The position numbers and the translations under genes were made by a program. Positions 4,018 to 56,965 of a DNA stretch of 64,000 bases are shown here, piece by piece. The first letter of the stretch is position 1. Each line of letters starts with the position of its first letter. The stretch is taken from positions 186,001 through 250,000 of the IMG/VR virus record IMGVR_UViG_3300032242_003291; one strand, 5' to 3'. Below the pieces are notes generated by a model, which saw only the letters and a program-made list of their open reading frames with translations, was not told where the DNA came from and did not search any database.

Positions 4018-4731
4018 TTACAAAATATCGTGTAAAAAAGAATTTTTCTTGGTTTCTGATAAATACTCTTTGGTAAATGAAAATGGGTCGTAAGGAATTA
4101 CGTTAAAAACTTTTTTATAATAACAATAAATCCTTTTTGCCGAGTCAAATTCATAAATTTGGTCAAATTTCAAAGGTCTTGTGGTGATAAATCGATTATT
4201 TTCAATTTTTTGACGAATTTTTTCACTATCGATTGAAGAATCCGATTTAATAAAACTTAAATTTTCTAAATCTTCCTTTAAATTTTCCATTCTAATAAAA
4301 TACTCAGGAATTCTACTATCAAAAGTCCATTTTGAAAAAAAATTGTAGTTAATATTATCAGTTTGATTAAATTTTGATAATTCCACTAAAGTTTTTCTTT
4401 TGATAAATGATTCCAATACCCATTCGTTAAACCTTTCTTTTATTTTTTGATAAATTGACTTTTCGATTACCACATCTCCGTATTGAGTTAACAAAAAAAC
4501 AGCAAAAATTCTATCATAAGGGTTCCTAACACTACAAATTAGTTTATAATTCGAGAATTCTTCAGGTATTTGATTAAAATGACTAGTATACCTCTCTTTC
4601 AAAGATATTTCATCATTTGTTTTCGAATTATAAACAAAAAAGTCATAATCGGATAAAATTTCTCTTGTAATTTTTGTACCACACCTTTCAGGTGCCCACC
4701 ATATAACATTATGTTTGTAAGATATGTTCAT
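4018..4731 (-). CDS. sulfotransferase (Sulfotransfer_2-like)
   Basis: PERCGT 5'-PSB-like loop, SVRNPYDR 3'-PB motif, FIRMENLKEDL. Confidence 0.75.
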   Translation of the reverse strand: MNISYKHNVIWWAPERCGTKITREILSDYDFFVYNSKTNDEISLKERYTSHFNQIPEEFSNYKLICSVRNPYDRIFAVFLLTQYGDVVIEKSIYQKIKERFNEWVLESFIKRKTLVELSKFNQTDNINYNFFSKWTFDSRIPEYFIRMENLKEDLENLSFIKSDSSIDSEKIRQKIENNRFITTRPLKFDQIYEFDSAKRIYCYYKKVFNVIPYDPFSFTKEYLSETKKNSFLHDIL

Positions 4732-4767
4732 ACTTTGGAAATATAATCTATTTATAGTAAAAAATAT

Positions 4768-5433
4768 ATGAAAAAATCATTCAAAAAATTTTGGTTACCT
4801 GTATTAGTAGGTTTCAGTCTTTTTATCTTGTCTTTCGTTGGTGCAAAAGCACAAGATGTTGTTGTTTTGAAACACACAAATTACACATCACATTTTAGTA
4901 AATCAAAACACTACCCAGTTATGGTTGAGTGGTGGATTACTAAAGCAAAAGCGGGTTGTGCAAATCAACTTGCAAGAAAAGACAACTTCAAACCTGACCC
5001 TTTATTGTTGAAAGAAACTGATTTAGCGGCAGACTACGTAGGTAGTGGTACTGATAGAGGTCATAATATGCCAGCGGCGGAAAACCAATGTCAGACTGCT
5101 ACAGTTCAAGACGAATGTTTTTACTTCTCAAACATGACACCACAATATCATTCACTAAATGCTGGTGATTGGAAAACATTAGAAGTTTTAGAAAGACAAA
5201 TTGCTAACGATAATGATTCAGTTCACGTTTGGTGTGGAAGTATTGGTGAAGCAAAGAAAATTGGAAAAGTCTCGGTTCCAACTGAATGTTGGAAAGTTAT
5301 TTACGTATTAAAAACTAAAGAATGGATGGCCTATGAGTTTAAGAACACAACTGATAAACCATCAGGGTTAAACTCTCATAAAGTAACTGTTGCAGATATT
5401 ACAAAATTAACAGGATTAAAATTCGTTAAATAA
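4768..5433 (+). CDS. exported DNA/RNA non-specific endonuclease (NucA/Serratia family)
   Basis: Signal peptide; DRGH motif, FYFSNMTPQ, LNAGDWKTLE, VPTECWKV. Confidence 0.9.
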   Translation: MKKSFKKFWLPVLVGFSLFILSFVGAKAQDVVVLKHTNYTSHFSKSKHYPVMVEWWITKAKAGCANQLARKDNFKPDPLLLKETDLAADYVGSGTDRGHNMPAAENQCQTATVQDECFYFSNMTPQYHSLNAGDWKTLEVLERQIANDNDSVHVWCGSIGEAKKIGKVSVPTECWKVIYVLKTKEWMAYEFKNTTDKPSGLNSHKVTVADITKLTGLKFVK

Positions 5434-6455: not shown

Positions 6456-6740
6456 TTACTCTTCGTATTTTATATTCTCAAAATTTTTGTTAATATCATC
6501 CAAATTTTTATCTAGTCTTCCTTGTAATTCTGGATGTAATTTTTTCCCTGTTTTGAACATTGCAAGAAGTTCTTGCAGTTTATCCATTATTTCTTCAACA
6601 GTTTCTTCAACATCTTCGTTACCATTGCTAGTGTCTATTTGCATTGGTTGTGAATAAATATCCAAATCCATAGCAACAGCATTTAAGCCTTGTTCTTGTA
6701 ATTTTTTTAGTTGTAATTCTGTTAAAATATATTTAGCCAT
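6456..6740 (-). CDS. leader-bearing hypothetical protein
   Basis: MAKYILTELQLKKLQEQ. Confidence 0.8.
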   Translation of the reverse strand: MAKYILTELQLKKLQEQGLNAVAMDLDIYSQPMQIDTSNGNEDVEETVEEIMDKLQELLAMFKTGKKLHPELQGRLDKNLDDINKNFENIKYEE

Positions 6741-6749
6741 TTGATATGA

Positions 6750-6761
6750 TATATTTATAAA
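6750..6761. promoter_or_regulatory. palindromic TATTTATAAATA, candidate bidirectional phage-class promoter
   Basis: Sits between divergent genes starting at 6740 and 6777 and gives TATTTAT on both strands. Confidence 0.6.
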
Positions 6762-6776
6762 TATAAAACAATACGT

Positions 6777-7586
6777 ATGAAAAACTTATTTTTGATTTTA
6801 GGAATAATTCCAATCTTGTCATTTGGACAAGTTTCCAATTGGAGAAGTAATCCACCTCAACAACACTCAACACAACAAAGGTCTGTTCCTTCTACACCGA
6901 CACCTTCAAGAAATGATAATGTAAGTTCTTGGAGAGCAACACCTCAACCTCAATCACCTCGAGAAAATAATAGACCAATTATTCGACAAAATAATATACC
7001 GTATCGTTACGGTAATCCTTACTATTACTATGGAACATATGGTTGGTATTATCCATCATATTACTATTGGTATGACCCATATGGATTTAGAAATAGAGGT
7101 CAGGTTTACATTTATGAAAATGGTAAATCAGATACTATCAGAACAACACCGACAAGATTTACTGTTGGTATTCAAAAGTCAAATGACATGTTAGGTGCTT
7201 GGTCAACAATTGGAAATGACGGATTTCTTATTTTAGATTACGTTACAACATACGAACAAGACAAATCCGATTTTTTCCCTTATGGAAAAATAACTCAAGT
7301 TGATTTCCCAATGGTCTCTGACTATGTTCAAAGAAATATATTTTACATAGGTGCTGGTAAAACTTTAGACCACAAATGGAGATTAAGTGCAAGTATTGGA
7401 TTCGGCAATGAAGTTGTTAGATATAGAGGTAAAGACGCAATTGGATACATTACATTTCCAAAATATTCAGGAAATTTTACAACAGTTAAACTTGGATTAA
7501 TTCGTAACTACAAAAAAGTATCTGCTAAGTTTGATTACGACCTAAGTAAAAAATATCTTTCTTTAGGATTAGGTGTAAATTTTTAA
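6777..7586 (+). CDS. exported protein, probable outer-membrane beta-barrel with low-complexity N-terminus
   Basis: Signal peptide, Pro/Gln/Tyr-rich linker, alternating beta strands, terminal LGLGVNF beta-signal. Confidence 0.6.
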   Translation: MKNLFLILGIIPILSFGQVSNWRSNPPQQHSTQQRSVPSTPTPSRNDNVSSWRATPQPQSPRENNRPIIRQNNIPYRYGNPYYYYGTYGWYYPSYYYWYDPYGFRNRGQVYIYENGKSDTIRTTPTRFTVGIQKSNDMLGAWSTIGNDGFLILDYVTTYEQDKSDFFPYGKITQVDFPMVSDYVQRNIFYIGAGKTLDHKWRLSASIGFGNEVVRYRGKDAIGYITFPKYSGNFTTVKLGLIRNYKKVSAKFDYDLSKKYLSLGLGVNF

Positions 7587-7587
7587 G

Positions 7588-7920
7588 ATGATTACAGTTT
7601 CACAAAAAGCACTAAACCACATAATAGAATTAATGATTGAGTCTGACTTAACACCAGACTCTCATCATTTAAGGGTAGGTGTTAAAGGTGGTGGATGTAG
7701 CGGTCTATCTTACGTTATGGAATTTGGTGATGAAGTTGAACCAACAGATGAAATTATTTCTGTCGATGGGGGTTTGAATGTTGTGATTGACCGAAAATCA
7801 GTTTTATATCTTTACGGAACTGAATTAGATTATTCTGATGGACTTAATGGAAAAGGATTTCAATGGATAAATCCAAATGCAAGCCGTGAATGTGGTTGTG
7901 GTTCCTCTTTTGCAATATAA
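7588..7920 (+). CDS. iscA: A-type Fe-S cluster carrier (HesB/IscA/SufA)
   Basis: LRVGVKGGGCSGLSY, GTELDY, NPNASRECGCGSSF. Confidence 0.95.
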   Translation: MITVSQKALNHIIELMIESDLTPDSHHLRVGVKGGGCSGLSYVMEFGDEVEPTDEIISVDGGLNVVIDRKSVLYLYGTELDYSDGLNGKGFQWINPNASRECGCGSSFAI

Positions 7921-28399: not shown

Positions 28400-28848
28400 A
28401 TACTATTTTCTTTTATCCATTTTTTCATCCACAATGGTCCATACAAATATAACAACCACCATCCCGAAAAAGATAATCATTGAGTAGTCCATATTATCTT
28501 TTTTTGAATAGGTTAATAAATCCACTTATAGTTGAAAATACCAACACATAGTATAATCCAATTACAATCCATTTAACAATTTCCATAATATAATTTTTAC
28601 AAACATAGTATATTCCACAAAATTTTCCAAAAATTTTTTTTCTCGTTGGGTGAGTATAATAAAAGTGGGGGGTCATGTTCTTAAATAAGTTACCTATTGT
28701 TCTTAACTCAAGAGGTGATGCACTTAAATTGGAAATATATTTCTAAATTATTAAAATTAAATAATGACTTGTTATTTTTTAGGTTGTAAACATATAATAA
28801 TAATTTACAATTGGAAATATGTTTCTAATATTAAGTATATTTATTAGT

Positions 28849-29421
28849 ATGAGTAATTTTTTAATATATGGATTGAGATGTCCAAAAACAGATGACTACA
28901 AATATATCGGTAAAAGTAGTTCAGGATATGAAAGAGCAAAGGCTCACTTAACCTTTTCACATAATAATTCAGTTAATCTTTGGGTGAGTGAATTGAGAGA
29001 AGAAGGACTGTCCCCACTAATTGATGTCCTTGAAGAATGTGATGAAAATAATCTCACAATTAAAGAACAATTTTGGATACAATTTTATGATGATAAAGGA
29101 TGTAAATTAATGAACCACATAAAGTATGATGGTAAAGCAATTCATAAATTGAAACAAGACATTTTAATCGAACAAGAAAAACTTAATAAAGAATTAGAGA
29201 CCGCTAAAAATAATTTACAAGAGTTTTCTAACATTTCTTTATTCATAAAAAAAAGAAGAAAACAATTAAACATAAATCAAATTGACTTATCAGAAATGGT
29301 AGGTATAACTAATAGAACCCTCACCATGATTGAGAATGAAACAGGTAATCCTTCATACTCCACAATTGTATCATTGTTAGATACCCTTGGATACAAATTG
29401 GTCCCAATATTGAAGACATAA
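28849..29421 (+). CDS. GIY-YIG endonuclease with C-terminal XRE/HTH_3 domain
   Basis: LIYGLRCP...YKYIGKS...RAKAH; IKKRRKQLNINQIDLSEMVGITNRTLTMIENETGNPS; TATTTAT at 28838-28844. Confidence 0.85.
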   Translation: MSNFLIYGLRCPKTDDYKYIGKSSSGYERAKAHLTFSHNNSVNLWVSELREEGLSPLIDVLEECDENNLTIKEQFWIQFYDDKGCKLMNHIKYDGKAIHKLKQDILIEQEKLNKELETAKNNLQEFSNISLFIKKRRKQLNINQIDLSEMVGITNRTLTMIENETGNPSYSTIVSLLDTLGYKLVPILKT

Positions 29422-31274: not shown

Positions 31275-31736
31275 TTAGAATTGACTAGTTGCACCTGTTG
31301 CACCCCCACCATATTGTGTTTGGTTAGGAGCTCCTCCAGTTGCTTTGTTTGGGTATAATTTATTTTTTAATTGAAGTGCATATGCAATTGCGTTTTGAGA
31401 TGCTTTTTGTGAATTAGGTGAAACATTAAAAGATTTCACACCTTTATTACCTTGATAAAAAACTTCTAGAGTCCATGGATTTCTTGATGGGTCATCTCCA
31501 CAATTTAAAAATACGTTAATACCTGTACTGTGGTTGTTGAAATACATATACTTACAACAAGCATATGGACATTTTTTCCATGTTGTTGCTTTGGACTCAT
31601 CAACCAATTTGAATCCCTCTTTAGTTAATTGAGGTACGATTAATTTATTCCAATAATCGAAATCTTCTTGCTCTTTAATTACTCTATTCACCAAACGAAC
31701 CAAATCGTTTTCTGTTAATCTTATTATTTTACTCAT
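31275..31736 (-). CDS. leader-bearing hypothetical protein
   Basis: MSKIIRLTENDLVRLVNRVIKEQ; TATTTAT at 31752-31758. Confidence 0.8.
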   Translation of the reverse strand: MSKIIRLTENDLVRLVNRVIKEQEDFDYWNKLIVPQLTKEGFKLVDESKATTWKKCPYACCKYMYFNNHSTGINVFLNCGDDPSRNPWTLEVFYQGNKGVKSFNVSPNSQKASQNAIAYALQLKNKLYPNKATGGAPNQTQYGGGATGATSQF

Positions 31737-31809
31737 AAAAAATATTTTATAATAAATATATCGAAAAGGTCATTTTTTTCCCAAAAATTTTTTTTGCGTA
31801 ACTCAAGGT

Positions 31810-32015
31810 ATTATCCCCCCCAAATGACATTCTGACAGTATAGTAAGGGGGGATACGGGGGGAGGGGGGGTGCCTACCCCATGCCAAGGGGGGTATATGG
31901 GGGAGGTAGTTATCCACATTTAGTCCCCACCCCTCCCGTTGTCGGTGTGGATAACAAACACCCCCTCCTGACATGTTGTCTCATAAAAAGTTATCCCCAT
32001 ATGGGATGGGGATAA
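31810..32015. other. candidate replication origin/terminus element: G-run tract plus paired DnaA boxes
   Basis: TTATCCACA at 31910-31918 (+) and 31946-31954 (-); TTATCCCCA pair at 31991-31999 and 32007-32015; multiple G5-G7 runs. Confidence 0.55.
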
Positions 32016-32020
32016 GTTTA

Positions 32021-32052
32021 TTTGGTTGTGTGAAAGCTATGTTGTATCTTTG
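32021..32052 (+). promoter_or_regulatory. Bacteroidota primary-sigma promoter, antisense to 32057..32503
   Basis: TTTG-N20-TATCTTTG. Confidence 0.8.
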
Positions 32053-32056
32053 TAGG

Positions 32057-32503
32057 TTATTCAGGTATGGTGTGAGTGTCCTTGTAGCCAGCGGGGACAA
32101 TCCATCTACCGATAGATAGTCTTCTTGTGCCAGGTAGCTTAAGGTCGTAAGGCATTGCTGCGGACTTATGAATACCTTTGATTGTATCTTCTATCTCGTT
32201 TGTTACTTCTTTGGCGTCTTCGTATGTACATTTGAATCCTGTGGACAGATATGGGGAGTTATATTCTCTACCATGTTCGATAGAACTTACAAGCCAACTT
32301 GCAAGACCCCAACCATATTCATCCTCTATCAAGTAGGGGTCGAAGTAAACGTCAATGAAGATAAGGTTATATTCATTTATTCTATCCTCTTCCACCCCGA
32401 CATCAAGTATCCATGGGTATTCACGTTTCAGCGCTTTAGCTGTAACCTTATACTCATAGTTGTCATATAATTCCTGTGGGGTCATTGGGTCCGATACTGC
32501 CAT
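32057..32503 (-). CDS. hypothetical protein
   Basis: 148-aa ORF. Confidence 0.7.
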   Translation of the reverse strand: MAVSDPMTPQELYDNYEYKVTAKALKREYPWILDVGVEEDRINEYNLIFIDVYFDPYLIEDEYGWGLASWLVSSIEHGREYNSPYLSTGFKCTYEDAKEVTNEIEDTIKGIHKSAAMPYDLKLPGTRRLSIGRWIVPAGYKDTHTIPE

Positions 32504-32546
32504 AATGGTAAAACCACATTTGGTTTAGAATGTGGGGATAACTTCT

Positions 32547-32578
32547 TTTGGTTATATCATAAATACTACATACCTTTG
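32547..32578 (+). promoter_or_regulatory. Bacteroidota primary-sigma promoter
   Basis: TTTG-N20-TACCTTTG. Confidence 0.8.
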
Positions 32579-32682
32579 TATTGTTCGAAGCGGGAGTGTA
32601 GAACGGGCGGGGGCAATGTGTCAGCTGAAGAAATCAGAGGTAGGCTATTTGGTCCCCACCCCAAACAGACGAGGGCGTAATA

Positions 32683-32714
32683 CAAAGGTACGTCTTTTTT
32701 CTGTAACTACCAAA
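32683..32714 (-). promoter_or_regulatory. Bacteroidota primary-sigma promoter convergent with 32547-32578
   Basis: TTTG-N20-TACCTTTG on the minus strand. Confidence 0.8.
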
Positions 32715-32750
32715 TCTTTTTTTCGGGATTATTTCGTATCTTTGTACCCT

Positions 32751-33143
32751 ATGAGACTGACAGATAAGATATATAATATGGACCTATCATACAGGGTGGT
32801 GAACTTGACCATTAAGTGGTGTGAGAAGTTCTTTACTGCTCCACACATTAAAAGACGTAGGGAACTTCTTGTCATGATATATCATTCCCCCACCCATCAG
32901 GTGTTCGGACAATACTGTGATAAGAACCATTGGTTGAGTATTAACATACATAACTGTCCGACAGTTAGGGACCTTATTAAAACTACCATCCATGAATATA
33001 CCCACGTATGTCAGGACCTGAAGGAATATGCTCTTATGAATAAGATGGTGGGGTATGATAAGAATCCTCTTGAAGTCGAAGCAAGATTGAATGAGGACAC
33101 ATACTATAAGAATTGTTGGAGGAGCATTAAATCGAAGCTTTAA
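32751..33143 (+). CDS. small HExxH metallopeptidase-like protein
   Basis: TIHEYTHVCQ...YDKNPLEVEAR; -7 TATCTTTG at 32737-32744; start re-assigned. Confidence 0.7.
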   Translation: MRLTDKIYNMDLSYRVVNLTIKWCEKFFTAPHIKRRRELLVMIYHSPTHQVFGQYCDKNHWLSINIHNCPTVRDLIKTTIHEYTHVCQDLKEYALMNKMVGYDKNPLEVEARLNEDTYYKNCWRSIKSKL

Positions 33144-33387
33144 TTAACTCCTGACACTTAGCCACAATATCCTTGGGAGTAATCTCTTCCCCACCATGGA
33201 CATATAGTCCTTCCACCTTTGCATCCACACAGGCCCATCCATCTAATCCTATGGGTTTCCTTGAGAAGGACCTCTTAGCCTTCTCGAAATATAAGGTCCC
33301 TAACTCCACTTCCCCACCCATCATCGTGACCACGACCCTGATTCTGTCAGGGTCTAACTGTGTTAACTCATAAGATAATTTGTCCAT
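33127..33387 (-). CDS. hypothetical protein
   Basis: MDKLSYEL... start re-assigned. Confidence 0.65.
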   Translation of the reverse strand: MDKLSYELTQLDPDRIRVVVTMMGGEVELGTLYFEKAKRSFSRKPIGLDGWACVDAKVEGLYVHGGEEITPKDIVAKCQELIKASI

Positions 33388-33421
33388 GTGTATAAGTATA
33401 CTTACGGAACACATAAAAATA

Positions 33422-33551
33422 AAGTTATCCACAGGTGGGGAATGGTCCTGACGATATGACAGGGTGGAAAAAAAGTTGGGGATGTGGATAACTTTGGGGG
33501 TAAAATATTTGGATTTGTCAGAATGTCAGGGGACCGTTACGATGGGGATAA
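33422..33551. other. second inverted DnaA-box pair
   Basis: TTATCCACA at 33425-33433 (+) and 33483-33491 (-); TTATCCCCA at 33543-33551 (-). Confidence 0.6.
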
Positions 33552-34161
33552 TCCCTCGACACACTTTTCCCCCACTTTCTACCACTATTGTTTCCCACAT
33601 TTTACCACCGAAATAGTCCCCACGTATATAAAAACACCACTTTTTCCCCTCTGTAGGGGTCTACAGGACCAGTTTTTTACTATATATAAAACCTAGCAAA
33701 AAAAGGAGTAATAAGTGTGAGACGCGGGGAAACGAACGTAGTGAGTGTTTCATGACTATTCAGTCATGGTTTAACCCCCCTTCAAGGAGGGAACCGATAT
33801 GTTTTATTACCTCCAACGAGGTGACAACTCAGTCCCCCACTCGTGGTGGAGACCTGTAGTCTGTGATAATATATCGTGTAAATGTATGATATTTCATTTT
33901 ATCGTGGGAATCCACGATGCTTATATATCATCTCATCCACATATGTAATGTGTCATAAGTAAACTTATAGCTTGACCCGTAGGGATGTTTTGTAAAGTTA
34001 TAGCTTGACACACTATATCACATATTAAAGTCTCTTCATATATGTGGGGAATATATTTGGTGGGGGATGTTCCCGACATGGATGTCGGAGACATATGGAT
34101 ATCCATATTTATCCGCAAATATACGATTGCATATCCGATATTATGTTATACCTTTGTGATT

Positions 34162-56837: not shown

Positions 56838-56893
56838 TCTTTTTTTAAAAATAGGGAACCTCGATTTTACGACCATAGTCAACCCATTCTTAG

Positions 56894-56965
56894 TTGCGAG
56901 GGATGGATTCGAACCACCGACCTAAAGGTTATGAGCCTTCCGAGCTACCTCTGCTCTACCTCACG
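56894..56965 (-). tRNA. tRNA-Met(CAT), initiator type
   Basis: Cloverleaf with CAT anticodon, TTCGAAT T-loop, C1:A72 mismatch, A11:U24; no encoded CCA. Confidence 0.92.

What the first reader, a model, noticed from the sequence alone, without database searches (positions are those of the whole stretch)
31790..34100. Candidate origin/terminus: paired DnaA boxes, G-run tract and CCCCACC repeats
Seen: four perfect TTATCCACA boxes in two inverted pairs (31910/31946 and 33425/33483) and four TTATCCCCA variants (31991, 32007, 32533, 33543) within 1.7 kb. A tract with many G5-G7 runs (31846-31904) could form a G-quadruplex. TCCCCAC(C) recurs, and ~650 bp at 33430-34100 is palindrome-rich without a credible CDS. 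Known: TTATCCACA is the consensus DnaA box. Inference: a host-DnaA-dependent phage origin, a DnaA-titrating decoy that stalls host replication, or the genome end/packaging region.
Basis: partly seen in the sequence, partly recalled or inferred. Interest (0 to 1): 0.8.

Follow-up and report, generated by a model that had tools for sequence, protein, structure and literature searches.

The report
Conserved DnaA-box module in jumbo phage
A ~320-kb phage, probably of Flavobacteriaceae, carries a conserved two-armed stretch of non-coding DNA packed with binding sites for the host replication initiator DnaA, plus G-runs and other repeats, around a small gene cassette; it is most likely a replication-start or control site, but no function has been shown.

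Summary
All 4 perfect TTATCCACA boxes, and 8 of the 9 TTATCC[A/C]CA sites in the 64-kb window, lie in 31910-33551. The window's only canonical G4 motif is at 31847-31870.

The locus is conserved. The window comes from a 317-kb IMG/VR contig, and 32 related viral contigs (up to 321 kb, probably Flavobacteriaceae phages) carry the same architecture:
- two non-coding arms, IG1 and IG3, that are partial inverted copies of each other;
- in each arm, DnaA-type boxes, a TGTCA-N3-TGTCA repeat and a GGGGATWATCCCC palindrome;
- between the arms, a cassette of two orphan proteins (F0 about 150 aa, F1 about 85 aa; an HExxH protein is optional).

In relatives chosen without reference to boxes, boxes are 6-25 times denser in the arms than in the flanks. 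Boxes change sequence but keep their positions. IG3 spacing is fixed to within 1-2 nt. No structured RNA is supported.

Tests that did not support an origin or a genome end: no oriC-type box/trio unwinding unit, no GC-skew switch, no replication or terminase genes within about 30 kb, and no recognisable initiator. The module is internal in four 317-321-kb contigs.

Best reading (about 0.36): a bipartite replication-initiation region assisted by host DnaA. Close rivals: a DnaA-gated transcription switch, or a DnaA-capture site like the phage T5 iss region.

The parts
31721..31800 (.). AT-rich tract at the left edge of IG1. It includes the conserved T7-CCC-A5-T8 tract (31773-31795) and the likely promoter of the leftward gene 31275-31736.
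   Evidence: The least stable 40-bp window of the whole 64 kb starts at 31721; with 60-bp windows it ranks only in the top 3.6%. The T/A tract is conserved in 18 relatives.
31807..31837 (-). Outer end motif of IG1: GGTATTATCCCCCCC (GGGGATTATCCCC palindrome in most relatives) followed by TGACATTCTGACA. It is the inverted copy of the IG3 end motif.
   Evidence: (I19, I24).
31844..31870 (+). Invariant G-run core TAAGGGGGGATACGGGGGGAGGGGGGG. It contains the only canonical G4 motif of the window (31847-31870).
   Evidence: 100% identical in L029 although the flanking genes are about 76% identical. The 18-nt core is present in 28 viral contigs. G4 regex and G4Hunter score 3.0.
31881..31968 (.). Second pair of G-runs, then the inverted box pair 31910(+)/31946(-) inside 20-nt inverted arms, with C-runs at 31925-31937 and 31959-31968.
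   Evidence: I8, I20; z = -2.3.
31969..31980 (.). TGACA-N3-TGTC dyad.
   Evidence: Equivalent dyads are present in relatives.
31991..32015 (.). Inverted pair of TTATCCCCA boxes. It forms a 10-bp hairpin followed by a T-run on the minus strand, so it looks like a terminator for F0. Relatives keep an inverted box pair at this position, mostly without a T-run.
   Evidence: (z = -4.6; L029 keeps the hairpin with both arms changed).
32021..32053 (+). Full Bacteroidetes-type promoter (TTTG-N21-TAnnTTTG) pointing into the antisense strand of F0. In L038 the same promoter precedes an extra gene.
32057..32503 (-). F0, a 148-aa orphan protein. It is present in the cassette of all 11 non-redundant relatives in which cassette ORFs were recognised.
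   Evidence: Model pLDDT 92.6. No match in PDB or BFVD, Pfam or PHROGs, or the protein atlas.
32533..32541 (-). Single TTATCCCCA box in IG2. It is kept only in the closest relatives (L029, L128).
32547..32714 (.). IG2: two full Bacteroidetes-type promoters facing each other (plus strand 32547-32578, minus strand 32714-32683), with about 90 nt of GC-rich overlap between them.
32751..33143 (+). F2, a 130-aa protein with an HExxH motif. It is an optional cassette gene, present in 5 of 11 relatives.
33127..33387 (-). F1, an 86-aa orphan protein, found in the same 11 relatives as F0. Its conserved leader and promoter region abut the first IG3 box.
   Evidence: Model pLDDT 78. No significant structural match.
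33406..33491 (.). IG3 box cluster: box 33425(+), the CTGAC-N5-GACAG dyad (33448-33462), an A-tract (33466-33475) and box 33483(-). Both boxes overlap TAnnTTT(G/A) elements resembling the -7 promoter box.
   Evidence: Start-to-start spacing of 57-58 nt is conserved.
33516..33555 (+). TGTCAGAATGTCAG direct repeat and the palindrome TGGGGATAATCCC. This is the outer end motif shared, in inverted orientation, with IG1.
   Evidence: The palindrome lies +28/29 from the repeat in all relatives.
33569..33649 (+). Three iteron-like direct repeats, CCAC-T4/5-NCC, at 33569-33585, 33593-33609 and 33635-33649, spaced 23 and 42 nt apart.
   Evidence: (D9).
33651..33712 (+). Short hairpin, then the conserved GACCAnTTTTTTACTATATA motif and an AT-rich tract.
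   Evidence: The motif lies +150-152 from the TGTCA repeat in all relatives. It is unique within the window.
33713..33850 (.). Distal part of IG3: moderately conserved non-coding DNA containing recurring YTCAACGA-type motifs.

Best explanation
The locus is a real cis-acting module, conserved across a clade of jumbo phages of about 310-320 kb that probably infect Flavobacteriaceae.

Anatomy. Two non-coding arms, IG1 (31737-32056) and IG3 (33388 to about 33850), are partial inverted copies of each other. Each carries a cluster of strong and weak DnaA-type boxes, a TGTCA-N3-TGTCA repeat and a GGGGATWATCCCC palindrome. They bracket a 1.1-1.8-kb cassette that always encodes two orphan proteins, F0 and F1. 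IG1 additionally holds an invariant G-run core able to form a G-quadruplex. IG3 additionally holds three iteron-like repeats and an AT tract, all at fixed spacing.

Proposed mechanism. I think it most likely works as a bipartite replication-initiation region assisted by host DnaA:
- Host DnaA binds the boxes in both arms.
- The two arms are brought together, looping out the cassette. This resembles the bipartite oriC of Bacillus subtilis and Helicobacter pylori, and the DnaA boxes that flank P1 oriR (comparisons from my own knowledge).
- Together with an unidentified phage factor bound to the TGTCA, palindrome and CCAC-T5 repeats, the complex opens a neighbouring AT tract (31721-31800 or 33668-33712).
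- The G-runs could act as a G4 or R-loop element, or as a barrier.

Shown: the sites exist, they are strongly enriched, they are conserved in position while their sequences change, and the region is not a coding sequence and not a structured RNA. Inferred: every binding, looping and unwinding step, and the involvement of DnaA itself.
For: - Enrichment in the window: all 4 perfect boxes and 8 of 9 TTATCC[A/C]CA sites lie in 3.6% of the window.
- Enrichment in 20 non-redundant relatives chosen by the G-run core only: 8.7-12.6 boxes per kb at +0 to +200 and 2.0-7.5 per kb at +1000 to +1900, against 0.53 per kb outside. Perfect boxes are 1.47 against 0.05 per kb.
- Same result in 20 relatives chosen by the F0 protein only.
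- Box turnover with position retained: CCCCA changes to CCACA in L029; extra or shifted boxes occur in L038, L122 and L126; TTATTAACA and TTATCAACA occupy the same positions in L164 and L167. The mixture of strong and weak variants is typical of DnaA sites.
- The logo of 81 distinct instances is AG-TTATCC[A/C]CA, with no further flank information.
- IG3 length is 188-191 nt in 9 phages, and motif spacing is conserved to 1-2 nt. Box-to-box spacing of 57-58 nt and box-to-palindrome spacing of 60 nt are conserved.
- Iteron-like repeats lie 23 and 42 nt apart, followed by an AT tract.
- The least stable 40-mer of the 64 kb sits at the edge of IG1.
- No RNA structure: z = +0.93, -0.5 and +0.27; consensus folds have 1 and 0 compensatory pairs.
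- All the other motifs are unique to this locus within the window.
- The locus lies at a divergence of transcription units.
Against: - No box has an adjacent run of DnaA-trios within 16 bp; the best cases are three NTN triplets with 0-1 consensus matches.
- The AT tracts are about 110-190 nt from the nearest perfect box.
- There is no GC-skew inflection. Cumulative skew keeps falling on both sides. Coding-strand GC skew of minus-strand genes left and right of the module does not differ significantly (0.192 against 0.160, p = 0.07; third positions p = 0.24).
- None of the 72 window ORFs screened against Pfam (62 in one batch, plus those) is a polymerase, helicase, primase, DnaA or Rep protein.
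- F0 and F1 show no similarity to initiators or DNA-binding folds.
- Several boxes coincide with promoter-like -7 elements and with a terminator-like hairpin, as expected for regulatory sites.
- Some relatives (L163) have almost no recognisable boxes.
- Whether large lytic phages use host DnaA at all is unknown. In T5 the conserved boxes are argued not to be an origin (bioRxiv 10.1101/866236).
Confidence: 0.36

Rival explanations
1. Transcription switch. The boxes and dyads are operators that gate the promoters of the F1-F0 cassette and of the two diverging gene blocks. Host DnaA, whose level reports the growth state of the cell, or a phage factor, would act as repressor or activator. The module would then be a regulatory hub and not an origin.
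For: - Both IG3 boxes overlap TAnnTTT(G/A) elements resembling the Bacteroidetes -7 promoter box, one on each strand (TGTGGATAACTTTG at 33483; TGTGGATAACTTTA on the minus strand at 33425). The F1 leader next to the box is the most conserved stretch of IG3.
- The 31991/32007 pair is a terminator-like hairpin just after the F0 stop codon.
- IG2 has two full promoters facing each other.
- Boxes occur as inverted pairs and dyads, as dimer-type operators do.
- The cassette genes are always enclosed by the arms.
- DnaA is a known transcription factor that binds pairs of sites (PMC11317965).
Against: - The -7-like elements at the IG3 boxes lack a properly spaced -33 TTTG, so they did not register as full promoters.
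- This reading does not explain the invariant G-run core, the iteron-like repeats, the AT tracts, or the inverted homology of the two arms 1.1-1.8 kb apart.
- The T-run after the hairpin is not conserved, whereas the box pair is.
- The E. coli site pairs are spaced 2-3 bp apart (PMC11317965); here the spacing is 5-49 bp.
Confidence: 0.28
2. DnaA capture without replication. The module would recruit host DnaA for another purpose. One option is a pause or anchor of the entering genome, as proposed for the injection stop signal (iss) of phage T5. Another is titration or re-charging of DnaA to disturb host replication, in the manner of datA, DARS or the DnaA-box clusters of B. subtilis.
For: - The formal resemblance to T5 iss is striking. 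T5 iss is a large untranslated region full of repeats and palindromes, with two inverted-repeat sets carrying consensus and variant boxes (TTATCCCCA, TTATCAACA, TTATTAACA), separated by a variable 1.8-4.3 kb, and conserved although the neighbouring genes are not (bioRxiv 10.1101/866236). The comparable features here are shown.
- The surrounding genes are many small orphans of the early-gene type.
- Inverted box pairs occur in more than 119 viral contigs, far above chance.
Against: - The T5 model itself is untested.
- T5 boxes are pairs spaced 3 bp apart and lie in the terminal repeat. Here the module is about 99-103 kb from the nearer end of four contigs of 317-321 kb.
- There is no sequence similarity to any deposited phage.
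- A plain decoy would not need fixed spacing or the other motifs. A sponge-like array looks different (L061).
Confidence: 0.15
3. The 9-mers are sites for a phage-encoded DNA-binding protein. Their match to the DnaA box would then be coincidental or convergent, and host DnaA would play no part.
For: - Whole lineages shift their boxes together toward TTATTAACA and TTATCAACA (L164 and L167).
- Two flank positions (AG) are conserved beyond the 9-mer.
- Other motifs clearly unrelated to DnaA (TGTCA repeats, GGGGATWATCCCC, CCAC-T5) show that at least one unknown binding factor must exist.
Against: - The commonest form is the exact universal high-affinity box (50 of about 108 instances inside the modules), and the variants are the classical weak-box forms.
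- Boxes act as single units in variable number, orientation and spacing, like DnaA sites and unlike a fixed operator.
- No candidate DNA-binding protein is encoded in the cassette.
Confidence: 0.12
4. Genome end or packaging (pac or cos) region.
For: Seven of 30 contigs of at least 25 kb end inside the module, against 0.78 expected (P = 1.7e-5). Two of them (L173, L180) run from the module exactly to the far end shared with the ~320-kb contigs.
Against: - The break points differ. One is a poly-G artefact inside the G-runs, two lie at or just before the palindrome, one lies before the T-run, and others lie inside the cassette.
- The module is internal at 213.8-218.1 kb in four contigs of 317-321 kb.
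- There is no terminase gene in the 64-kb window.
- G-runs, palindromes and a variable cassette are enough to explain broken assemblies.
Confidence: 0.04
5. The GC-rich non-coding stretches encode structured RNAs.
For: GC-rich islands in an AT-rich genome often mark RNA genes (my own knowledge). A hairpin followed by a T-run lies at 33651-33678. The IG2 plus-strand stretch has z = -1.7.
Against: - No Rfam match.
- The IG3 consensus fold is only -9.4 kcal/mol with 1 compensatory pair, and the window sequence folds no better than shuffles (z = +0.93).
- Distal IG3 has 0 consensus pairs and z = -0.5.
- IG1 has z = +0.27 on the plus strand and -0.48 on the minus strand.
Confidence: 0.03

Closest known systems
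Injection stop signal (iss) region of phage T5 and its relatives (bioRxiv 10.1101/866236)
   Same: A large untranslated region in a lytic phage. It has two inverted-repeat sets separated by a variable distance of a few kb. Each set carries consensus DnaA boxes plus the same variants (TTATCCCCA, TTATCAACA, TTATTAACA), with many repeats and palindromes. It is conserved although the neighbouring small genes diverge.
   Different: There is no sequence similarity. T5 boxes are pairs spaced 3 bp apart, whereas here they are inverted pairs spaced 5-49 bp apart. T5 iss lies in the terminal repeat near the left end, whereas this module is internal in the assembled contigs. This module has an invariant G-run core and always encloses a two-gene cassette. 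The proposed role of T5 iss is itself unproven.
Bipartite chromosomal origins (B. subtilis, H. pylori) and the box/trio unwinding unit (PMC8287927, PMC6669920)
   Same: Two clusters of DnaA boxes separated by a gene-bearing segment of about 1.3-1.8 kb. Strong and weak boxes are mixed. AT-rich DNA lies at the flank.
   Different: No dnaA gene lies between the clusters. No DnaA-trio run lies within 16 bp of a box. There is no skew switch. The box orientations are mostly inverted pairs, not a directional array.
Iteron origins with auxiliary DnaA boxes (P1 oriR, pSC101, F, RK2; lambda ori). Review: PMC4980987; details partly from my own knowledge.
   Same: DnaA boxes at the edges, short direct repeats in helical phase, an adjacent AT-rich tract, and promoters next to the origin.
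   Different: There are only three short repeats, of about 12-16 nt. No Rep or O-like initiator gene is recognisable next to them. No homologue was found on any plasmid.
Non-origin DnaA-box clusters of bacterial chromosomes (E. coli datA, DARS1/2; B. subtilis DnaA-box clusters). From my own knowledge and PMC12371093.
   Same: Clusters of several boxes outside an origin, some in opposed orientation, acting on DnaA availability or nucleotide state.
   Different: Those are cellular loci. No IHF or Fis sites could be tested here. The extra conserved motifs and the fixed architecture have no counterpart in them.
G-rich primer or R-loop elements (mtDNA CSB II G-runs, the ColE1 RNA II G-rich hybrid). 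From my own knowledge.
   Same: G6-A-G7 type runs close to a putative initiation region, with G4 potential on the G-rich strand.
   Different: No promoter was found that would transcribe the G-rich strand through the tract. There is no evidence of an R-loop. The intervening bases (ATAC) are invariant as well, which points to sequence-specific recognition more than to a structure alone.

Membership tests
oriC-type DnaA-dependent origin (box/trio unwinding unit) | A cluster of several DnaA boxes matching TTATCCACA or close variants | tested here: met
oriC-type DnaA-dependent origin (box/trio unwinding unit) | A DnaA box followed, within 16 bp, by at least 3 DnaA-trios (NAN, consensus 3'-GAT-5') leading into the unwinding region (definition from PMC8287927) | tested here: not met
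   Four boxes have no run at all. The other four have the minimum of 3 triplets with 0-1 consensus matches, which is expected by chance in AT-rich DNA.
oriC-type DnaA-dependent origin (box/trio unwinding unit) | An easily melted AT-rich element directly next to the boxes | tested here: inconclusive
   The least stable 40-mer of the 64 kb starts at 31721, but it lies about 190 nt from the first perfect box and ranks only in the top 3.6% with 60-bp windows. The IG3 AT tract is unremarkable.
oriC-type DnaA-dependent origin (box/trio unwinding unit) | A switch in compositional skew at the origin | tested here: not met
   within the 64-kb window only. The whole 317-kb contig could not be retrieved.
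oriC-type DnaA-dependent origin (box/trio unwinding unit) | DnaA binds, and replication starts here | not testable with these tools
   Needs EMSA or ChIP and marker-frequency analysis.
Iteron-type phage or plasmid origin with auxiliary DnaA boxes | An array of direct repeats (iterons) in helical phase | tested here: inconclusive
   Three CCAC-T4/5-NCC repeats, 23 and 42 nt apart. Two are strongly conserved and one weakly. They are shorter and fewer than classical iterons.
Iteron-type phage or plasmid origin with auxiliary DnaA boxes | A cognate initiator (Rep or O) gene adjacent to the iterons | tested here: not met
   F0, F1 and F2 have no Rep-like or DNA-binding match in Pfam, PHROGs, PDB, BFVD or the atlas. 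An unrecognisable initiator cannot be excluded.
Iteron-type phage or plasmid origin with auxiliary DnaA boxes | DnaA boxes flanking the repeat and AT-rich core | tested here: met
T5-type iss region | A large untranslated region with two inverted-repeat sets that carry DnaA and DnaA* boxes, a few kb apart | tested here: met
   compared.
T5-type iss region | Boxes arranged as pairs separated by 3 bp, with a 52-bp spacer between the repeats | tested here: not met
   Here the inverted pairs have 5-49 bp between them.
T5-type iss region | Location in the terminal repeat, close to the end that enters the cell first | tested here: inconclusive
   The module is internal in four contigs of 317-321 kb and 11 kb from an end in one contig of 309 kb.
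T5-type iss region | Sequence homology to T5-like phages | tested here: not met
G-quadruplex-forming element | At least four G3+ tracts with loops of 7 nt or less | tested here: met
   31847-31870 is the only such motif in the window; G4Hunter score 3.0. It is conserved in 28 contigs.
G-quadruplex-forming element | It actually folds into a G4 | not testable with these tools
   Needs CD, melting or polymerase-stop assays.
Structured non-coding RNA | Thermodynamic stability beyond shuffles, and covarying base pairs | tested here: not met
Packaging site or genome terminus | Lies at the physical ends, or next to the terminase genes | tested here: not met
   The excess of contig breaks has scattered positions.

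The most novel reading that the evidence does not exclude
Large lytic phages of unrelated lineages (T5-like phages of enterobacteria, and these Flavobacteriaceae jumbo phages of about 320 kb) would have converged on the same device: a two-armed, inverted array of strong and weak DnaA boxes that captures the host initiator for a purpose other than starting phage replication. Examples would be pausing or anchoring the entering genome at the membrane, or reprogramming host initiation. In this clade the device would be combined with an invariant G-quadruplex element and two dedicated orphan proteins (F0, F1).
Probability: 0.15. Interest if true: 0.8.

Novelty: new variant of a known kind. Interest (0 to 1): 0.58.

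Why it matters
Replication origins and early control regions of jumbo phages are almost entirely unmapped, and whether such phages use the host initiator DnaA is not known. This work provides a sharply defined element of about 2.1 kb, conserved in at least 32 contigs, with named motifs and fixed spacing. It can be tested directly by DnaA binding, minireplicon assays, marker-frequency analysis and G4 assays.

If it is an origin, it would be the first defined for this clade and would be a tool for building Flavobacterium vectors. If it is not, its parallel with the T5 iss region would suggest that capturing DnaA is a recurrent phage strategy. The two always-linked orphan proteins, one with a confident fold that has no match in the PDB or BFVD, are obvious candidates for new DNA-transaction or host-takeover functions.

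Tried and rejected
- Close or distant relatives among deposited phages and plasmids: none.
- Rfam matches: only one weak chance-level hit.
- Structured RNA in IG3, distal IG3 and IG1: rejected.
- Function of F0, F1 and F2 through Pfam, PHROGs, structure prediction with PDB and BFVD searches, and the protein atlas: no lead. F1 shows only a weak, non-significant resemblance to half a GNAT fold.
- Box/trio unwinding unit: not found.
- Skew switch: not found.
- Invertible segment or mobile element bounded by the inverted arms: considered. All relatives examined have the same orientation and the same kind of flanking genes, so it was set aside.
- The 31991/32007 pair as merely a terminator: only partly. 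The T-run is not conserved, but the box pair is.
- The G-run core in three Flavobacteriaceae MAG contigs, followed up as a possible RNA 5' end: inconclusive (z = -1.2; the three copies are too similar for covariation).

Full report
**Observation.**
TTATCCACA occurs four times in the 64-kb window, and all four copies are here: 31910(+), 31946(-), 33425(+), 33483(-). About 1.2 would be expected by chance. TTATCCCCA occurs at 31991(+), 32007(-), 32533(-) and 33543(-), plus once elsewhere. Thus 8 of the 9 TTATCC[A/C]CA sites, and 12 of the 34 sites with at most one mismatch, fall in or next to a stretch that is 3.6% of the window. The G-run tract contains the only canonical G4 motif of the window (31847-31870), and all six G4Hunter peaks of the window lie between 31.8 and 34.1 kb. 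GC content rises to 0.41 against a background of about 0.31. TCCCCAC is enriched, with 8 of its 15 copies here.

**What genome this is.**
The window is part of IMGVR_UViG_3300032242_003291, a contig of 317,259 bp; window position 1 is about contig position 186,004.
- No deposited phage or plasmid resembles it.
- Promoter motifs are of the Bacteroidetes type, TTTG-N17-23-TAnnTTTG.
- The invariant G-run core also occurs in three contigs of Flavobacteriaceae or Flavobacterium MAGs.

The host is therefore probably a flavobacterium. This is an inference. Pfam screening of 72 window ORFs (62 of them in one batch) finds accessory functions only: glycosyltransferases, NUDIX, cyclophilin, a nuclease, cell-wall hydrolases, HNH and a DNA methylase. 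There are no replication genes and no terminase genes.

**Anatomy.**
The boxes lie in three intergenic gaps.
- IG1 (31737-32056) reads, from left to right: an AT-rich tract with a conserved T7-CCC-A5-T8 element; GGTATTATCCCCCCC (a GGGGATTATCCCC palindrome in most relatives); TGACATTCTGACA; the G-run core; a second G-run pair; the inverted box pair 31910/31946 with C-runs; a TGACA-N3-TGTC dyad; and the inverted CCCCA pair 31991/32007.
- Next come F0 (32057-32503, minus strand); IG2 with one box and two full promoters facing each other; F2, an HExxH protein (32751-33143, plus strand); and F1 (33127-33387, minus strand).
- IG3 (from 33388) reads: the F1 leader; box 33425; a CTGAC-N5-GACAG dyad; an A-tract; box 33483; TGTCAGAATGTCAG; the palindrome TGGGGATAATCCC (which contains the '33543 box'); three CCAC-T4/5-NCC direct repeats 23 and 42 nt apart; a small hairpin; the motif GACCAGTTTTTTACTATATA with an AT tract; and a distal part with YTCAACGA-type motifs.

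Read on opposite strands, IG1 and IG3 share, in the same order, ATTATCCCC, then TGACATTCTGACA, then GTTATCCACA, then TGTGGATAAC. The two arms are therefore partial inverted copies of one unit. All of these non-box motifs are unique to this locus within the 64 kb.

**Conservation.**
- A composite IG3 pattern retrieved 6 further viral contigs.
- The 18-nt G-run core retrieved 28.
- A profile of the F0 protein retrieved 32, several of them 309-321 kb long.

In IG1 the segment 31811-31873 is 100% identical in L029, although the flanking genes are only about 76% identical. IG3 measures 188-191 nt from the TGTCA repeat region to the T-run in nine distinct phages, and the internal distances are kept to within 1-2 nt: box at -32 to -34, palindrome at +28/29, T-run motif at +150 to +152. 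Between the arms, F0 and F1 are present in all 11 non-redundant relatives in which cassette ORFs were recognised. F2 is present in 5 of those 11, and other small genes come and go.

**Are the boxes the selected feature?**
Two samples chosen without reference to boxes say yes.
- In 20 non-redundant loci picked by the G-run core, sites with at most one mismatch reach 8.7-12.6 per kb just right of the core and 2.0-7.5 per kb at +1.0 to +1.9 kb, against 0.53 per kb elsewhere. Perfect boxes are 1.47 against 0.05 per kb.
- In 20 loci picked by the F0 protein alone, the peaks are 6.7 per kb immediately beyond the F0 stop codon and 3.3-5.8 per kb at 0.75-1.5 kb on the other side, against about 0.5 per kb over the surrounding ±8 kb.

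Boxes turn over while the positions persist. CCCCA in the window corresponds to CCACA in L029. L038, L122 and L126 have extra or shifted boxes. L164 and L167 carry TTATTAACA and TTATCAACA at the same places. The variants used inside the modules (TTATCCACA 50, TTATCCCCA 19, TTATCAACA 10, TTTTCCACA 9) are the classical weak-box forms. A logo of 81 distinct instances adds only AG on the 5' side.

**What it is not.**
- It is not a structured RNA. There is no Rfam hit. The IG3 consensus fold is -9.4 kcal/mol with one compensatory pair, and the window's own sequence folds worse than shuffles (z = +0.93). Distal IG3 has no consensus pair. IG1 has z near 0 on both strands.
- It is not an oriC-type unwinding unit. 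Using the published definition (box, spacer of 16 bp or less, at least three NAN trios; PMC8287927), no box qualifies beyond chance level.
- It is not a skew switch. Cumulative GC skew falls on both sides. Minus-strand genes to the left and right have similar coding-strand skew (0.192 against 0.160, p = 0.07; third positions p = 0.24).
- It is not a terminus in the assemblies. The module sits at 213.8-218.1 kb, 98.8-103.4 kb from the nearer end, in four contigs of 317-321 kb.

Contigs do break here far too often: 7 of 30 contigs of at least 25 kb, against 0.78 expected (P = 1.7e-5). The break points are scattered, however. One is a poly-G artefact inside the G-runs, two lie at or just before the palindrome, one lies before the T-run, and others lie inside the cassette. 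That fits sequencing and assembly trouble at G-runs, palindromes and a variable cassette better than a single physical end.

**The cassette proteins.**
They give no help. F0 has a confident model (pLDDT 92.6) with no match in the PDB or BFVD. F1 (pLDDT 78) has only non-significant, partial GNAT-like hits. Pfam, PHROGs and the protein atlas give nothing.

**Interpretation.**
The data show a protein-DNA assembly site with at least two kinds of ligand: something that reads DnaA-type 9-mers as independent units, and something that reads the TGTCA, GGGGATWATCCCC and CCAC-T5 motifs.

The simplest candidate for the first ligand is host DnaA. The commonest site is its universal high-affinity box, and the variants are its known weak forms. 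This is an inference.

I rank a bipartite initiation region assisted by DnaA first, at about 0.36. It has two box clusters around a gene-bearing segment of 1.1-1.8 kb, iteron-like repeats, A-tracts and AT tracts in fixed register, and the least stable 40-mer of the window at its edge. It is also the only such locus within the 64-kb window and within ±8 kb of the cassette in the relatives.

A DnaA-gated transcription switch is nearly as good, at about 0.28. The IG3 boxes overlap -7-like promoter elements on both strands, the CCCCA pair is a terminator-like hairpin behind F0, and IG2 has face-to-face promoters. The two readings are not exclusive.

The closest formal analogue in a lytic phage is the T5 iss region. 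It has two inverted-repeat sets with consensus boxes and the same variant boxes, at a variable distance of a few kb (bioRxiv 10.1101/866236). It differs in box pairing (3-bp spacing), in location (terminal repeat) and in sequence. A DnaA-capture role without replication therefore stays open, at about 0.15.

**Limits.**
- The rest of the 317-kb contig could not be fetched, so genome-wide skew, box density and the location of the replication genes remain unknown.
- All binding and mechanistic steps are inferred.

Noticed in passing
window 32547-32714: Two complete Bacteroidetes-type promoters face each other (plus strand 32547-32578, minus strand 32714-32683). The mRNAs of F2 and F0 would therefore start with about 90 nt of mutually complementary, GC-rich leader. 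This could be a convergent-promoter switch. The plus-strand stretch 32584-32706 folds marginally better than chance (z = -1.7) and ends in a weak hairpin and T-run, so it is also a small-RNA candidate.
   Followed up: partly
L150 146-500; L151 about 4480-4990 (minus strand); L152 about 6600-7110 (minus strand) and 7166-7669: The invariant G-run core and its upstream T/A tract also occur in three Flavobacteriaceae or Flavobacterium MAG contigs. There they have no DnaA boxes and no F0 or F1. They lie at the start of a conserved non-coding stretch of about 330-480 nt that ends in a hairpin and T-run, next to a gene resembling the HExxH protein F2. The core is thus a separable unit of unknown function. 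The test for RNA structure was inconclusive.
   Followed up: partly
L061 12862-13347 (IMGVR_UViG_3300043009_000020): An unrelated viral contig carries 23 perfect TTATCCACA boxes within about 480 bp, 22 of them in the same orientation. This is a far denser, sponge-like DnaA-box array. L041, L093 and L024 have 9-10 boxes each.
   Followed up: no
By my own rough estimate only a handful would be expected by chance. Paired DnaA boxes seem widespread on phage-classified contigs of many GC contents.
   Followed up: no
L153-L183 (coordinates): The module is a hotspot for contig ends (7 of 30 large contigs; P = 1.7e-5). L173 begins with a run of 17 G inside the G-tract, which looks like a poly-G sequencing or assembly artefact. 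Four contigs of 317-321 kb from different samples have the module at nearly the same coordinate (213.8-218.1 kb). This suggests that these assemblies share fixed, non-arbitrary ends.
   Followed up: partly
window 32021-32053 (plus strand): A canonical promoter points into the antisense strand of F0. In L038 the same promoter precedes an extra 133-aa gene (L038 7116-7517). In the window it may therefore be a relic, or it may drive an antisense RNA.
   Followed up: no
window 31275-31736 (minus strand); L038 4718-6407 and 11973-12621; L123 8392-11361: Many small flanking proteins start with a shared N-terminal motif (roughly M-K-x-I-I-R-L-T-E-S-D-L-x-R-I-V-K-R-V-I-x-E). This appears to be a large family of paralogous orphan proteins in this phage clade.
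   Followed up: no
window 28819-29421 (plus strand) and 56893-56965 (minus strand): A 200-aa protein has a C-terminal HTH_3 domain (Pfam) and, by eye, an N-terminus resembling a GIY-YIG nuclease. A tRNA-Met gene lies at 56893-56965.
   Followed up: no
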